Shown in pieces: positions 52,901 through 58,900 of a stretch of 64,000 nucleotides of DNA (position 1 is the stretch's first letter; each line of letters starts with the position of its first letter). Under the pieces are notes generated by a model. The model made no database searches, had not been told where the DNA came from, and was given only the letters and a program-made list of their open reading frames with translations. Origin of the DNA: Octopus bimaculoides (taxonomy: Eukaryota); contig NC_068997.1 in the NCBI RefSeq assembly GCF_001194135.2, positions 10,247,811-10,311,810 on the forward strand, given 5' to 3'. The position numbers and the translations under genes were made by a program.

Positions 52901-55900
52901 CGGACACACGTATATGTGTGTGTGAGTATGTGTGTGTTTGTGCGTTTGTGTGTGTATTTGATTGCTATTTTTAACTGGACGAGAGATCACGTAGTGGTGC
53001 CCTTGTTTCCTGATCAGGTAGCTTTTTATTGTGTTTGGAGGGAGCCGTCTATAAAAATTATAGTATATTCCAATCTAGTCTGCTATATATATATATCCCA
53101 TATCTCGAGGTATAGAACTCGGCCATATTGGACAATAAAGAATCGTAAATACATTACGAATTCCTCTTCTAAATTCTAAGAAAATAGCATTTTGTATATA
53201 TAAATACTTACCCCTTTCGGAATTGTATATCCACGAATGTTTATATCCTTGTACAACTGTCTGAAGTTTCCTGGAATAACTGGGTAGTACCTGAAAGCGA
53301 AAGAAAAAAATGCGTTTTTTTATTAAATATATCTTGAACTTATTTTTAGGAAGAGATAATCATTTATTACATCGTACTATCTTTTAAACGATTTTTAATT
53401 TCTCTGGTTACCTCCTTCCCTTGATGCCCCCCCCCCACTAAACACTGCTTATTTTGCTTAATGGTGAATACAGCGCTACAGTCACGAAAAGTTGTGGGAG
53501 GAAATGAAGAAGATGTCCTCATGCAGGAGGAAACAACCTGATCCGCATGGTTGATTCTCATGAATTCAACAACCAAGTTCTCGGTGGTTATAGTGTTAAA
53601 CCAGATGACAGGTGAAGGTTACCACTCATGTAGGCCATGGCGGGATTTGAACACAAAACTCGAAGAGCAAGAATAAATACGATAAGGCATCCGGTTTGCA
53701 TTCTACTAGTACAAAGCCTTGGAATGGTCCTTATTTTATTGCCCCCCCACCAAAAAAAAAAAAAAAATTAAAGGCGAAGTTGACCTCGATGTGATTTGAA
53801 CTCGGAATATAGAGGTTCGGAAAACATTCTGCTTGACTCGACACTCAGATGACTCTGCCACTTTATCACTACGATAAAATACACGAAGCAATAATTGTAT
53901 TGCACACCAAGAATGTATTTTTATGCTGTTCCATGCTTCAATGTATATTATGTATGTTATGTATGTAATATATATTCACCGGAATTTTAATCTGCTGCTG
54001 TTTTAAGTGTTTCTTTTCATTTAACTGTAGCCCTGCTACTGTTTGCATCAATCAGTAAATGTTTCGTTTGACGATTTCTGTGTCGGAACAAGCATTTTCG
54101 GCTTGGCTCTGAATGTCGGGGATATTTGTCACTAAGGAGACCAAATCAAGTCGTAACACCGTGTCAAGCGATCCACTAGGATTCTAAGCGAAGCCCTTTA
54201 TTTGTTTACTTATTTACGTTGAAAGAAAGAAAGAAAGAAAGAAAGAAAGAAAGAAAGAAATATAGATAGATAGATAGGCAGATAGATAGATAGATAGATA
54301 GATAGAGAGAGAGAGAGAGAGAGAGAGAGAGAGTGGTGATAAGCAAAGACATGCTGATATATTTTTGTTGAATTGTTAAACGTTTGTAAGAGATCTTTCA
54401 ACTACAAACCTTAATGTTTCTTTCACAAATGCTTTTAAATATGGCATCTTTGCGAGTGTGGTTTGCGTTATGTCGTTAGTATGTTCGTTAAATATAAGTC
54501 TGCGAATTTCTTCTCGTAACGTTTCTTGTGCTTCTGGATGTTGTGTTAACGCGTATAAGACAAACGACAACAAGCTTCTTAACTGGAAAACAAAAAATAA
54601 ACAAAAGGTCAGTAGCAGAAAATACACCACATTTTAGTTTCATACACGGAAGTCAAAGAATGCAAAGAGAACCGATGTTGGTTACGACGAAGAGTTTTGA
54701 TCGAGAATACAAGATAGTCATTGAATCATAGTCCTGGGGCTCAACATTCAACAGACACTTGTACACTTAATAAACGTTTTCGTGTGACGCAGTTTGTATT
54801 GTAACTACTTCCATTCAAGCAGACTTCCACTGCACAGTTTCCGTCAACGCAATATCATTTGCAAGATATACGTTGACCCGACGCTATACTAGAAATCCCT
54901 TGCCAAAGATACAATACCCAAGAACAACGCCTGGGACCGCAAACTTGCGAAACGAATTTCTTAAGCATTCGACTATAACTGCGTGTTGTGCTTTTGTATT
55001 AATTTGTATAGCTGTGACGTGAATCTCGACAAAAGAGATGGGTACATGTGTAATTAACATCCAAGAAAAATGTTTGTCTTAAGTAAATCATCTTCTCTTT
55101 GAGGATGGTAAATAGTTAATTTGGTAAACTGTCGGGTTTGCTGCTGTCATCAAATTTGAGACGGTGTCAGCGCTAGCAAACTCATTTAATAAAGTCTATG
55201 ACAATGATAACACACAGACGTACTCACACACATGCACACACACACGCAAGTATATATATATATATATATATATATATATATATATATATATATATATATA
55301 TATATATATATATATATATATATATATATATATATATATATATATATATATATATATATATATATATATATATATATATATATACACACACACACACACA
55401 CATATGTCAGTGCTTTACTGAACACTCCAGCGCACTAATCGACATATACCCATTAATCCAAAATATTGTATATATATTCATAAATATATACATATATTTA
55501 TGTATATATACATGCATATATACACGCACACATACACACAGACATACACACATACACACACATGGATGGATGGATGGAGATAGACAGAAAGATAGATAGA
55601 TACAAAAGCTAGTTAGATAAATTCCAGAAGATTCCAGCAATGTCAGGTTCATGTCAAAGAGGTCATTAATATGTCAGCATTTAACGGAAAGACACGAAAT
55701 TAGTTGGATACAGTTTTGTCATATCCACTGACATTTAAGATTTTTGATATTGTTATTTATAGCGAGAGGTCAAACACCTTAACCGATTGGATCAAAACCA
55801 ACATTTGTTATTGCTGCTGCTGTTGTTTGATTGTGTTTAGCCGCAGATTATGTAGAAAGTTGGAGCTGATTCTTCTCTAATAAATGGGCCGACGGAGCTC

Positions 55901-58900
55901 CTCGTTGCTTACATATCTATGTGGAATCGTAAGTCCACTGACCAGTAGCATCTGGCGTTTGAGAGACATAGCTTACATATCTCTACATTGCCTTTTTTTG
56001 GTCACTTTTTCGCCTGGGTTGGTGAATGGTTTTTCATTCACTTACTCCTTGGGCCTTGTTAAATTTCTTGCAACCGTTTGAAGCATTTCAAATTTTCACC
56101 AGATTCTATTAAACTGTTCTACACTGATGTAACTTCGTTACAATTAGGTTCTATAAAAATGAATACAGGTTACGTCATCAGTATGTAAATCTACATTTTT
56201 TTTCAGAACAATCTTGTACAAATTTGGATTACTTCAAGTTGTGGGAAGAGATTTAACAAGATCCCTTTCTTATACGTTGATACATTATTGATAGCTTATT
56301 TATATCCATGACAACTTTTGTTTAAGAAGGGAAAGCTACGATATCCCTCTCTATGTTGTCAGTAAATGGATATAAAAAATATCCAGTCAAGTAAATAATC
56401 ACCGGTTTAAAAACAAACCCATGAGGTGGTGAAAAACACGAGATATATAGCTTAAAGCGGGCTTGCGGCACACTCTGCGTCTGTACGGACGAGGTCGATT
56501 TGATGGCGAGCATGTGCTTACGTACAGCCCAAAGATTTGATCACTATAAACTAAACATCGGTGCAGGCTGCTCTTAACAAGATGTTGTAGAATCGTCTTT
56601 CTCGAAGTCGAGAGGTAACTAACGACAATACTTGTCTAACACCTATTTCGATGTGTCTATCTTTCTGTCTTGATCTATGACATCAAGTCTTTGATCACAC
56701 ATTTCTCTCTCTCTCTCTCTCTCTCGTTTTTCTTTTCGTCTCTTCTCCTGTCTCCGTTCTTCTTTGTCCTTCCATCTTCGTCGTTTCTATATCCTTCATT
56801 TTGACTACTATTTGTGACAGTCTATCTCTCTTTAGTCATTTGCTTAAACACAAGAAAGTCAGCTTGCTGATATCGGGATATTAAAAAAGAAAAAAAAAAC
56901 AAGAAAAAAACCCAAACATTATTTGAGTAAATAAAATAAATGTTAGAAGGAATATTTACTGTGAAAACTGATGATGCAATGATGTCTTTGATGATGGTCG
57001 TTATTTCCTGTTTGTTCAGTCGGTTTTCTTGTAATAACTGGCAAAGCAAACCATTTTCTAAAAATGCCTTCCCAGCTGCATGTGGACAACCGCTTTCCTC
57101 TTCCATTTTCGTATTTGTGTGGTGCGGACACTGTCGTTTTGTGAACTTTTCAACTTCGACTAACATTTTATTTTCGATGAATCTATGTTGAAAAGAAAGA
57201 TAAAGTTAAAAAGGCCTTGTTAATAAGTATTAGTTCTTTTGCGGGGATAAAGGAAGCACATGAATACGTAAACAATCTCCTGGCCGACACGTTTTCTAAA
57301 TTACTTTATGCAACTACGAGGGAACCGTTACGTAGTCGGTCGATTTGTTAAAAATAGCGGCTATATTCCCCTCAAATATCATCTCTGTCTTCTCAAAACA
57401 AATACTTCAGTATTCTGGCTTTCTTAGACTATATCCACGTAAGATATATATATATATATATATATATATATTGAAAAAAAAAGTCGTCAGAATTTTGGAA
57501 TAACTTCTTTCATTTATATTATACATATATTAGCGCTTTCGTTCGTCTTTCGATATATCTATATCTATCTATCTATCTATCTATCTATCTATCTATCTAT
57601 CTATCTATCTATCTATCTATNNNNNNNNNNNNNNNNNNNNNNNNNNNNNNNNNNNNNNNNNNNNNNNNNNNNTATATATATATATATATGAGTGTGTGTG
57701 TGTGTGTGTGTGTGTGTGTGCGTGCGTGCGTGTGCGCGTGAGTATGTGTATGCGTATGTGTGTGCATATATATATTTGTGTGTGCGTAATTGCTGGTGTT
57801 TGCTCCCAGGTCTACCCTAATCGAAGTAATTCTAACCGTGCCCTTCCCGTCTTTACTGAGTCATCTCGGGCTACCATCATTTAATATATCGTTTACCTTC
57901 TCCTTTAAGATGGTTGGCTTATGATCTGACCGAGATTTGTCTATCTAATAACACTAGCATAGACTGCCTCGCCGGCTTAACTGAAAGTTATTTCTGCGTA
58001 TGTATACTGAATAAATCGCAGCTAGAACAGTAATTAGTCTATAATATCTTACAGATATGCTTGAATAGAAATATGATGTAGAGATAATCAATCAAAAATT
58101 TCATGTAACTTGAGATATTAAGGAACGTTGCATATTCTGCCAGAAATGTTTGAGAAATTCCGGTCAACTGGTTCACCAGTATATGGGTCAAACTATGCAG
58201 TTATAACCTAAATTGTCCCATAAACTTTCTTTTCGTGAAAACGACGTTTTATTAATACTTAACCAGCTTGAACCAATTAAAGAAACAGATCTTAGAATCA
58301 TTGCAGTTGTTGTTGTTGCCGTCTACTCAAAAACAGCCTGATGGAGTGAATTCATGAGCAAAGGCATTCCAGTCGTGAACATCCGGCGTTTTATTTATGT
58401 ATAGTGTTTCTAGGACTTCATCGACCATGTACTATATATAGGTATATATACTATACTTATAACATTTGACAACTCCAGGGGTTCAACACTTTTCAAAGAG
58501 TCACTGAAAGATACAGTTCGCTGAGAAGGATTTCTCTGAAAGCCACGACTTGATATATTTTGTGTCTAAATAACGTCCAATGCCATGCGTGTATTCGTGT
58601 TTCTTTGCCATTTTTTAAAGAGGAAAGGCAGTTACCATGATCATTTTCATGGCCACTGAGACTCGTTTAATGGGGCAAGGGGGCTGGCCTCATCAAACTG
58701 AAGACCTGCTTTGAATGCCTGAAACGGAATGGATCCACTCTCACACAAAGCACCCAAGGACACCAAATGGCGGTGGGTCGAACCAGGCACGTTGGAGGTT
58801 TCTGCGAGTATGCGTGTGTGTTTGTATGTACATGTGTGTGTGCGTGTGTATGTACATTTGTGTGTGCTTCTCTGTACATGTGTGTGTGTGTGTGTGTGTG

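What the first reader, a model, noticed from the sequence alone, without database searches (positions are those of the whole stretch)
54540..56995. Intact mitochondrial-clan P450 with a rewired O2-activation I-helix (ASSVFT|LRS)
Seen: the spliced I-helix reads [10 protein letters not shown]|[10 protein letters not shown], while the heme loop [14 protein letters not shown], the PERF-like motif and all 9 exons are intact. Known: mitochondrial P450s have (A/G)G-x-(D/E)-T-(T/S), e.g. CYP27A1 LMAGVDT|TSNTL, and the acid-alcohol pair drives proton delivery. Here AG->SS, D->F and the second T->L, with only the catalytic Thr kept. P450s with altered acid-alcohol pairs (CYP74, CYP5A1/CYP8A1, CYP152) do peroxide or isomerase chemistry. 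Inference: this may be a non-monooxygenase or unusual-chemistry mitochondrial P450 in cephalopods.
Basis: partly seen in the sequence, partly recalled or inferred. Interest (0 to 1): 0.75.

Follow-up and report, generated by a model that had tools for sequence, protein, structure and literature searches.

The report
Octopus mitochondrial P450 lacking I-helix acid
This is an intact, strongly conserved octopus gene for a mitochondrial cytochrome P450 whose oxygen-activating helix has lost its usual acidic residue; a tick hormone-making P450 with the same V-F-T core is a proven ordinary hydroxylase, so the change alone does not imply exotic chemistry.

Summary
The window is Octopus bimaculoides DNA. 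On the minus strand, nine GT-AG exons (49788-63753) splice to a 553-aa protein identical to the NCBI model XP_014788703.1. The I-helix reads A354-S-S-V-F358-T359 | L360-R-S across a phase-0 junction (56960 | 54582). The same SSVFTLRS occurs in O. sinensis, O. vulgaris, Argonauta hians and three uninterrupted RNA-seq contigs, one from the cuttlefish Sepia esculenta. Motif codons differ only synonymously, and dN/dS is 0.04-0.10, so this is not a decaying copy or a splice artefact.

- The catalytic Thr, the ExxR, PxRW and Cys-loop motifs, the adrenodoxin-docking basic residues and a basic N-terminus are all kept.
- Arthropod CYP314A1 (Shade) also lacks the acid, and the tick enzyme (GGVFTA) has demonstrated ecdysone 20-hydroxylase activity.
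- The cephalopod clade groups with canonical (A/G)GVDTTS mollusc P450s, never with Shade, so the resemblance is convergent.

Most likely this is an adrenodoxin- and O2-dependent mitochondrial monooxygenase acting on a lipophilic endogenous substrate. An unusual redox-partner-dependent reaction, as in bacterial CYP114, cannot be excluded. Interest is modest.

The parts
49788..63753 (-). Whole coding span of the P450 gene: 9 exons, 553 codons plus stop.
   Evidence: The spliced CDS translates exactly to P0001 / XP_014788703.1. All introns are GT-AG.
63519..63753 (-). Exon 1 (aa 1-78). It carries a basic, acid-poor N-terminus (a mitochondrial-type presequence) and the IPGP hinge.
   Evidence: There are 6 K/R and 1 D/E in the first 43 residues. 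The AF2 model is disordered or amphipathic here.
62851..63076 (-). Exon 2 (aa 79-153).
60671..60861 (-). Exon 3 (aa 154-217), including the helix C motif WKHTR (aa 159-163).
59325..59526 (-). Exon 4 (aa 218-284).
56960..57182 (-). Exon 5 (aa 285-359). It ends with the first half of the I-helix, ...[10 protein letters not shown].
56960..56977 (-). Codons A354 S355 S356 V357 F358 T359. F358 sits at the acid position and T359 is the conserved Thr.
   Evidence: Translation. Register fixed by alignments to CYP24A1 and CYP11A1 and by column counts.
54583..56959 (-). Intron 5 (2377 nt, phase 0, GTAAAT...TTTTCCAG). It is rich in microsatellites and holds no hidden exon.
54410..54582 (-). Exon 6 (aa 360-417, the last codon partial). 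It holds [19 protein letters not shown] (rest of the I-helix), the helix K motif [11 protein letters not shown] with the adrenodoxin-docking K409 and K413, and ExxR.
53212..53290 (-). Exon 7 (aa 417-443).
51027..51233 (-). Exon 8 (aa 444-512). It holds PNRW (51150-51161), the heme loop [10 protein letters not shown] (51069-51098, Cys496) and the basic pair K499-R500 (51063-51068).
49788..49913 (-). Exon 9 (aa 513-553 plus the stop codon).

Best explanation
The gene encodes a functional mitochondrial-clan cytochrome P450 specific to coleoid cephalopods. It is a divergent offshoot of a mollusc-wide mitochondrial-clan group whose other members have the canonical GVDTTS I-helix.

Proposed mechanism:
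- The protein is imported into mitochondria through its basic presequence.
- It receives electrons from adrenodoxin at the conserved K409/K413/K499/R500 surface.
- It binds O2 at a Cys496-ligated heme.
- It acts as a monooxygenase, most likely a hydroxylase, on a lipophilic endogenous substrate, possibly a sterol or steroid.

The I-helix acid has been replaced by Phe358 and the second Thr by Leu360, while the catalytic Thr359 is kept. Proton delivery to the iron-bound dioxygen would therefore run through Thr359 and ordered water, perhaps helped by the Ser355/Ser356 hydroxyls or by the substrate. Arthropod Shade (CYP314A1) has the same V/I-F-T core and hydroxylates ecdysone normally, so it must manage in a comparable way.

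Shown: the gene structure, the conservation, purifying selection, retention of the motifs, the fold, and the Shade precedent. Inferred: mitochondrial location, adrenodoxin dependence, the monooxygenase outcome, the proton route and the substrate class.
For: - Exact nine-exon model identical to the NCBI protein.
- Pfam p450 at 1.3e-72.
- AF2 model with pLDDT 88 and pTM 0.87, with a continuous I-helix at residues 342-373.
- The top Foldseek and sequence matches in the PDB are the mitochondrial steroid and secosteroid hydroxylases CYP24A1, CYP11A1 and CYP11B, with target-normalised TM-scores of 0.85-0.90.
- T359 is Thr in 79/85 sequences. E414, R417, P468, R470, G492, R494 and C496 are invariant. 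K409 is K/R in 83/85, K413 in 75/85, K499 in 81/85 and R500 in 81/85.
- SSVFTLRS is identical in 10 cephalopod sequences from octopods and decapodiforms. Its codons differ only synonymously.
- dN/dS is 0.04 for Octopus-Argonauta and 0.10 for L001-L002. In the I-helix segment, Octopus and Argonauta show 0 nonsynonymous against 11 synonymous differences.
- Chelicerate Shade reads GG(I/V)FT and insect Shade reads AGI(K/H/Y)TL. O. moubata Shd has demonstrated 20-hydroxylase activity (PMC4411005).
Against: - No biochemical data exist for this protein or any ortholog, and no substrate is known.
- Beyond the I-helix, the cephalopod clade has class-changing substitutions at about ten positions that are conserved in canonical relatives. 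These include P488Q just before the heme loop, E503L in helix L, F252N in helix F and G229D. Shade does not share them, so the Shade analogy covers only the acid-alcohol pair.
- CYP114 shows that a hydrophobic residue at the acid position can redirect the reaction outcome.
- Mitochondrial targeting was judged from composition only.
Confidence: 0.6

Rival explanations
1. The enzyme still depends on adrenodoxin and O2, but the missing acid slows or redirects protonation of the iron-peroxo species. It would then carry out a non-standard oxidation, such as C-C cleavage, ring rearrangement, desaturation or sequential oxidation, rather than simple hydroxylation. This is analogous to bacterial CYP114.
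For: - CYP114 keeps the Thr and has Ala or Val at the acid position. Putting Asp back there restricts it to plain hydroxylation (PMC10293830).
- The cephalopod clade has additional fixed changes around the heme and distal pocket: Q488, L503, N252 and D229.
- The motif has been strictly conserved since the octopod-decapodiform split.
Against: - Shade, with the same F-T core, is an ordinary hydroxylase.
- Nothing in the sequence specifies a reaction type.
- CYP114 also needs a dedicated ferredoxin, for which there is no evidence here.
Confidence: 0.2
2. The protein would be a redox-partner-independent P450 that uses peroxide or rearranges hydroperoxides or endoperoxides, like CYP74, CYP5A1, CYP8A1, CYP152 or the CYP255 peroxygenases.
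For: - The acid-alcohol pair is altered.
- Altered pairs accompany peroxygenase activity in CYP255, which has Gln-Glu (PMC11842817).
Against: - The conserved Thr is retained.
- No acid-base residue replaces the acid. Phe is inert, unlike the Gln-Glu of CYP255.
- All four adrenodoxin-docking basic residues are retained.
- The heme loop has normal length and sequence.
- A mitochondrial presequence is retained.
- The nearest structural relatives are all adrenodoxin-dependent hydroxylases.
Confidence: 0.07
3. The protein is a catalytically crippled or non-catalytic P450, for example a heme or ligand binder or a regulator, kept for a role other than oxidation.
For: - Loss of the acid, plus changes at other usually conserved sites (P488Q, E503L).
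Against: - All heme-binding and fold-defining invariants are kept.
- Purifying selection is very strong, including on the I-helix itself.
- Acid-less Shade is active.
Confidence: 0.05
4. The motif is an artefact of a wrong gene model. The real transcript would use another exon or splice site that encodes AGxDT.
For: - Intron 5 contains one weak canonical-looking string, ASADTVSNL, at about 55150-55180 on the minus strand.
Against: - That string has a stop 9 codons upstream, matches only at tblastn E = 11-17, and is one of 3 regex hits where about 1.5 are expected by my rough estimate.
- It is not conserved in the Argonauta intron.
- Three uninterrupted cDNA contigs and the Argonauta gene give the same junction.
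- The splice sites are canonical.
Confidence: 0.01

Closest known systems
Mollusc mitochondrial-clan P450s with canonical I-helices: Patella vulgata XP_050410435.1, Lottia gigantea XP_009051674.1, Mizuhopecten yessoensis XP_021338948.1, Pomacea canaliculata XP_025086041.1, Babylonia areolata XP_076450255.1 and Potamilus streckersoni KAK3583387.1.
   Same: - These are the closest non-cephalopod relatives, at E 6e-78 to 3e-68 and 30-39% identity.
- They form a clade with the cephalopod sequences in 68% of NJ bootstraps.
- They share length, the K-helix, the PxRW motif and the FGFGPRSC heme loop.
   Different: - All have (A/G)GVDTT(S/G), where cephalopods have SSVFTLR.
- They keep P before FGFG and E in helix L, where cephalopods have Q488 and L503.
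- Identity is below 40%, so under the usual CYP naming convention this would be a separate family.
Arthropod CYP314A1 (Shade, ecdysone 20-monooxygenase), in particular Ornithodoros moubata Shd (BAR80872.1).
   Same: - It is a mitochondrial-clan P450.
- The acid position is occupied by Phe in chelicerates (GG(I/V)FT), with the Thr retained.
- Insect Shade also has Leu at the second-Thr position (AGI(K/H/Y)TL).
- The K-helix and CxG(R/K)R basic residues are kept.
- The tick enzyme is a proven hydroxylase.
   Different: - It is not orthologous: the cephalopod clade joins Shade in 0 of 200 bootstraps, and scores are much weaker (about 1e-45 against 1e-78).
- Shade keeps GG before the motif where cephalopods have SS.
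- Shade keeps the canonical residues at the other cephalopod-specific sites.
Vertebrate mitochondrial P450s CYP24A1, CYP11A1 and CYP11B1/2.
   Same: - They are the best solved-structure relatives by sequence (3k9v, 8e-51) and by fold (target-normalised TM 0.85-0.90).
- The adrenodoxin-docking residues are the same.
This was not checked here.
   Different: - They have the canonical A(A/G)V(E/D)TT.
- Identity is only 20-25%.
CYP44-type lophotrochozoan and ecdysozoan mitochondrial P450s.
   Same: - This is another mitochondrial-clan group without the acid: GDGL(S/N/R)TTVP.
   Different: - The motif is different and it forms a separate clade. Its function is unknown.
Bacterial CYP114 (gibberellin ring contraction).
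   Same: - A hydrophobic residue (Ala or Val) sits at the acid position, the Thr is retained, and the enzyme depends on a redox partner.
   Different: - It is a bacterial class I P450 with no close sequence relationship.
- The missing acid is functionally tied to ring contraction, which is untested here.

Membership tests
Cytochrome P450 superfamily (PF00067) | Significant match to the P450 profile over the whole domain. | tested here: met
   Pfam p450 at 1.3e-72 and 245.5 bits, covering residues 61-528.
Cytochrome P450 superfamily (PF00067) | Heme-thiolate loop FxxGxRxCxG, the ExxR motif of helix K, and the PERF/PxRW motif. | tested here: met
   [10 protein letters not shown] at 489-498, ETLR at 414-417 and PNRW at 468-471. 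E414, R417, P468, R470, G492, R494 and C496 are invariant in 85 sequences.
Cytochrome P450 superfamily (PF00067) | The P450 fold. | tested here: met
   AF2 gives pLDDT 88 and pTM 0.87. More than 1600 PDB P450 chains match at E <= 0.001, with a top target-normalised TM of 0.90.
Cytochrome P450 superfamily (PF00067) | I-helix (A/G)Gx(D/E)T(T/S) acid-alcohol motif. This is typical of the superfamily but not obligatory. | tested here: not met
   The protein has S-S-V-F-T-L, and only the Thr is kept. Other accepted P450 families also lack the motif, so membership stands.
Mitochondrial clan of animal P450s | Closest relatives and phylogenetic placement lie among mitochondrial-clan families. | tested here: met
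   The best named hits are CYP12, 301, 302, 49, 27C1-like, 24A1 and 11A1. The sequence nests within mitochondrial-clan sequences in the NJ tree.
Mitochondrial clan of animal P450s | Basic residues that dock adrenodoxin: two Lys in helix K, and the basic pair after CxG. | tested here: met
   K409, K413, K499 and R500 are present, in columns that are K/R in 75-83 of 85 sequences. They align with the CYP11A1 and CYP24A1 residues. Their role in adrenodoxin docking comes from established knowledge of CYP11A1 and CYP27A1.
Mitochondrial clan of animal P450s | An N-terminal mitochondrial presequence instead of a microsomal membrane anchor. | tested here: inconclusive
   The first 43 residues have 6 K/R and 1 D/E and no long hydrophobic anchor. 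No targeting predictor or localisation data were available.
CYP314A1 / Shade (ecdysone 20-monooxygenase) | Orthology with arthropod CYP314A1. | tested here: not met
   The cephalopod clade joins the Shade sequences in 0 of 200 NJ bootstraps. Instead it is sister to canonical mollusc P450s.
CYP314A1 / Shade (ecdysone 20-monooxygenase) | An acid-less I-helix with the Thr retained, of the form x-G-(I/V)-(F/K/H/Y)-T. | tested here: met
   V-F-T here against (I/V)-F-T in chelicerate Shade. This is a resemblance only.
CYP314A1 / Shade (ecdysone 20-monooxygenase) | Ecdysone 20-hydroxylase activity. | not testable with these tools
   It needs expression and an assay. The activity is shown for the tick enzyme only (PMC4411005).
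Redox-partner-independent P450s (CYP74, CYP5A1, CYP8A1, CYP152, CYP255) | The conserved I-helix Thr is lost or replaced, often with an acid-base or Arg/Asn residue taking over. | tested here: not met
   T359 is retained and the acid is replaced by the inert Phe. CYP255 has Gln-Glu.
Redox-partner-independent P450s (CYP74, CYP5A1, CYP8A1, CYP152, CYP255) | No need for a redox-partner docking surface. | tested here: not met
   All four adrenodoxin-docking basic residues are kept under purifying selection.
Redox-partner-independent P450s (CYP74, CYP5A1, CYP8A1, CYP152, CYP255) | Peroxide- or hydroperoxide-driven turnover or isomerisation. | not testable with these tools
   This needs a biochemical assay.

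The most novel reading that the evidence does not exclude
Coleoid cephalopods carry a lineage-specific, adrenodoxin-dependent mitochondrial P450. Its acid-less, Phe-bearing I-helix arose independently of arthropod Shade. Together with its remodelled heme surroundings (Q488, L503, N252), it could support a non-standard oxidation such as C-C cleavage, rearrangement or sequential oxidation. That reaction could be a step in a cephalopod-specific sterol or steroid hormone pathway, for example the optic-gland cholesterol metabolism linked to post-mating decline.
Probability: 0.12. Interest if true: 0.7.

Novelty: new member of a known kind. Interest (0 to 1): 0.3.

Why it matters
Cephalopod P450s are almost unstudied. 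My literature searches found no paper on cephalopod mitochondrial-clan CYPs.

This gene defines a coleoid-specific family, below 40% identity to anything outside cephalopods. It has been under tight constraint since octopods and decapodiforms split.

Its I-helix converged on the arrangement seen in arthropod Shade. That gives a second, independent natural experiment on how a mitochondrial P450 activates O2 without the conserved acid.

If the gene turns out to be the "CYP27a-like" enzyme induced in the octopus optic gland after mating, it would become a concrete handle on cephalopod steroid signalling. That link was not tested here. As things stand, it is a well-behaved P450 with an interesting but precedented motif variant.

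Tried and rejected
1. Hidden or alternative exon encoding AGxDT.
- tblastn with the exon 5 and 6 peptides, and with the canonical I-helix segments of four mollusc relatives, found only the known exons.
- A regex hit, ASADTVSNL, lies in intron 5 at about 55150-55180 on the minus strand. It has a stop 9 codons upstream and is at chance level.
- Intron 5 shares nothing with the Argonauta intron except low-complexity matches.

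2. Orthology with Shade. Rejected by NJ bootstraps, 0 of 200.

3. A shared set of compensating changes in all acid-less proteins. The cephalopod-specific substitutions at conserved sites are not shared by Shade.

4. Third homolog search, with a cephalopod-plus-mollusc profile. It returned no further cephalopod members or canonical cephalopod paralogs. The word-index candidate cap also missed known relatives, so absence is not shown.

5. Linking the gene to the optic-gland "sterol 27-hydroxylase" of Wang & Ragsdale 2018. The held text gives no gene identifiers and no supplements are held.

6. Species of two RNA-seq runs. SRR8281679 and SRR24189495 were not found in the literature. Only SRR1386223 could be assigned, to Sepia esculenta.

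7. Rfam and tRNA scans of the whole window found nothing.

8. Residue-to-heme distances could not be measured, because the structure tool returns no model coordinates.

Full report
**What is in the window**

The window is animal genomic DNA: 30-40% GC, many microsatellites and eleven N gaps. A draft translation of the minus-strand reading frames around the finding retrieved a 553-aa NCBI protein, [quoted passage not shown]. This is P0001, XP_014788703.1/XP_014788712.1, UniProt A0A0L8I8S7, and it was formerly named "cytochrome P450 27C1-like".

A spliced reconstruction places nine exons on the minus strand, all with GT-AG introns:
- exon 1: 63519-63753
- exon 2: 62851-63076
- exon 3: 60671-60861
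- exon 4: 59325-59526
- exon 5: 56960-57182
- exon 6: 54410-54582
- exon 7: 53212-53290
- exon 8: 51027-51233
- exon 9: 49788-49913

The 1662-nt CDS translates exactly to P0001. The finding's coordinates cover the end of exon 5, the 2377-nt intron 5 and the start of exon 6.

- Exon 5 ends GCA TCA TCA GTT TTC ACA, followed by GTAAAT.
- Exon 6 starts after TTTTCCAG with TTA AGA AGC.
- The junction is phase 0, and the I-helix reads [10 protein letters not shown]|[19 protein letters not shown].

HMMER alignments to rat CYP24A1 (LAAVETT) and to CYP11A1 (AGGVDTT) fix the register. F358 stands at the conserved acid, T359 at the conserved Thr and L360 at the second Thr. S355 and S356 replace the A/G-G pair.

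In an 85-sequence mitochondrial-clan alignment:
- the acid column is D47/E2 against F18;
- position 356 is G in 74;
- position 359 is T in 79;
- position 360 is T in 55.

**It is not a gene-model artefact or a decaying copy**

- The Argonauta hians ortholog (P0002, locus L004) has the same nine exons and the same phase-0 junction.
- Three RNA-seq contigs (L001, L002, L003) carry uninterrupted ORFs that read SSVFTLRS straight through the junction.
- L003 comes from run SRR1386223, which a published study lists as Sepia esculenta (PMC6906322). The motif is therefore shared by octopods and decapodiforms.
- O. sinensis, O. vulgaris and further Logan contigs have it too, making ten sequences in all.
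- The motif codons differ synonymously between lineages (TCA/TCT, GTT/GTA, TTC/TTT, ACA/ACG, TTA/CTC/CTT, AGA/CGA).
- Nei-Gojobori dN/dS is 0.04 for Octopus-Argonauta and 0.10 for L001-L002.
- Within the I-helix segment, Octopus and Argonauta show 0 nonsynonymous against 11 synonymous differences.
- No duplicate of exon 5 or 6 exists in the window, and intron 5 shares nothing with the Argonauta intron apart from low-complexity matches.

Direct transcript evidence from O. bimaculoides itself was not available.

**What the protein is**

- Pfam p450 matches at 1.3e-72.
- The AF2 model has mean pLDDT 88 and pTM 0.87. The I-helix is continuous over residues 342-373. There is a low-confidence insertion at about 303-317 that the three cuttlefish/decapodiform transcripts lack.
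- By sequence and by fold, the best solved structures are the mitochondrial steroid and secosteroid hydroxylases CYP24A1, CYP11A1 and CYP11B1/2, with target-normalised TM-scores of 0.85-0.90.
- The N-terminus is basic and acid-poor, with 6 K/R and 1 D/E in the first 43 residues.
- The four basic residues known from CYP11A1 and CYP27A1 work to dock adrenodoxin are all present. These are the two helix-K lysines and the pair after CxG: K409, K413, K499 and R500. They lie in columns that are K/R in 75-83 of 85 relatives.

**Where it sits among relatives**

An exhaustive HMMER scan of 1.8 billion cluster representatives found one cephalopod cluster. After that there is a gap to 28-39% identity.

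The nearest relatives are mollusc proteins from Patella, Lottia, Mizuhopecten, Pomacea, Babylonia and Potamilus. All of them have the canonical (A/G)GVDTT(S/G).

In a 167-sequence neighbour-joining analysis:
- the cephalopod clade has 100% bootstrap support;
- it forms a clade with these seven mollusc sequences in 68% of replicates.

The acid was therefore lost on the stem of coleoid cephalopods, from a canonical ancestor. Identity below 40% would make this a separate CYP family under the usual naming convention. I could not check the official nomenclature.

**The key precedent**

Several more distant hits also had Phe at the acid position. Cluster look-ups and a second homology search identified them as arthropod CYP314A1 (Shade, ecdysone 20-monooxygenase):
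- chelicerates read GG(I/V)FT(V/T);
- aphids read AGIKTLGN;
- beetles read AGI(H/Y)TLKN.

The Ornithodoros moubata protein in my set (P0226, BAR80872.1, GGVFTATN) is the OmShd of Ogihara et al. 2015. In S2 cells it converts ecdysone to 20-hydroxyecdysone, and the authors remark on variation in its conserved motifs (PMC4411005).

So a mitochondrial-clan P450 with the same V-F-T core is a proven ordinary hydroxylase. CYP44-type proteins, GDGL(S/N/R)TTVP, are a further acid-less mitochondrial-clan group. The cephalopod clade never joins Shade (0 of 200 bootstraps), so the resemblance is convergent.

**How it most likely works**

The retained Thr, heme ligand loop, ExxR and PxRW motifs, adrenodoxin-docking residues and presequence, all under strong purifying selection, point one way. 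This looks like a mitochondrial, adrenodoxin- and O2-dependent monooxygenase acting on a lipophilic endogenous substrate. Protons would reach the iron-bound dioxygen through Thr359 and ordered water, as must also happen in Shade.

The gene structure, conservation, selection, motif retention, fold and the Shade precedent are shown. The mitochondrial location, the electron donor, the reaction type and the substrate class are inferred.

**Rivals**

By established knowledge, its comparators lack the Thr and need no redox partner. CYP255 peroxygenases place Gln-Glu there (PMC11842817). This protein instead puts an inert Phe at the acid position and keeps the docking surface.
- A softer version cannot be excluded. 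Bacterial CYP114 keeps the Thr, has Ala or Val at the acid position, still uses a ferredoxin, and needs that missing acid for ring contraction. Putting Asp back there restricts it to hydroxylation (PMC10293830).
- In favour of some functional shift, the cephalopod clade also differs in residue class from at least 75% of 124 canonical relatives at A100, E155, T176, D229, D/N231, N252, K447, Q488 (Pro in 94%), L503 (Glu in 85%) and Q533. Shade does not share these changes.

**Novelty and verdict**

The gene is already annotated as a P450. No paper I could find treats cephalopod mitochondrial-clan P450s or this motif.

It is best described as a new, convergent member of the known class of acid-less mitochondrial-clan P450s. 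Interest is modest unless biochemistry shows unusual chemistry, or the gene proves to be the "CYP27a-like" transcript induced in the octopus optic gland after mating. That lead comes from bioRxiv 10.1101/340984 and could not be tested.

**Limits**

- The phylogeny is neighbour-joining on Kimura distances only.
- dS between octopods and decapodiforms is saturated.
- Two RNA-seq runs could not be assigned to a species.
- No model coordinates were available for measuring distances to the heme.

Noticed in passing
window 15497-17050 (+): A single uninterrupted 517-aa ORF. From the Met at 15647 it matches Pfam SK_channel (7e-36), Ion_trans_2 and the calmodulin-binding domain. It looks like a small-conductance Ca-activated K+ channel gene whose core is apparently encoded without introns.
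   Followed up: partly
window 34041-34403 (+): A 120-aa ORF with three C2H2 zinc fingers (Pfam zf-C2H2 1.8e-13). It lies next to microsatellites and an N gap and may be a fragment of a larger gene or of a mobile element.
   Followed up: partly
window 58941-59240, 60100-60327, 45834-46146, 41512-41694, 39245-39364: A dispersed repeat of about 300 bp (SINE-like), with copies 72-78% identical to one another. Two copies lie in introns 3 and 4 of the P450 gene. Their six-frame translations recur in the ORF lists.
   Followed up: partly
window 46553-46840 (-): A 96-aa ORF (…RRLRWYGHVVRM…RGRPRKTW…) that resembles the tail of a retroelement ORF. It has no Pfam hit.
   Followed up: partly
P0001 residues 100, 155, 176, 229, 231, 252, 447, 488, 503, 533 (exons 2-9 of the gene): At these positions all five cephalopod orthologs differ in residue class from at least 75% of 124 canonical mitochondrial-clan relatives. 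Examples are P-to-Q just before the FGFG heme loop and E-to-L in helix L. Arthropod Shade does not share these changes.
   Followed up: partly
P0001 residues ~303-317 (exon 5, window about 57090-57130): An insertion present in Octopus and Argonauta ([23 protein letters not shown] region) but absent from the three cuttlefish/decapodiform transcripts. The AF2 model has low confidence there, pLDDT 52-60.
   Followed up: no
locus L003 1-480: The Sepia esculenta RNA-seq contig is 5'-truncated for the P450. Upstream it carries an unrelated ORF, so it is possibly a chimeric assembly or a transposon-derived sequence.
   Followed up: no
window 29406-29939 (+): A 177-aa ORF made almost entirely of Asp/Asn/Gly runs (GAT/GAC repeats). 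It is low-complexity sequence, probably not a gene.
   Followed up: no
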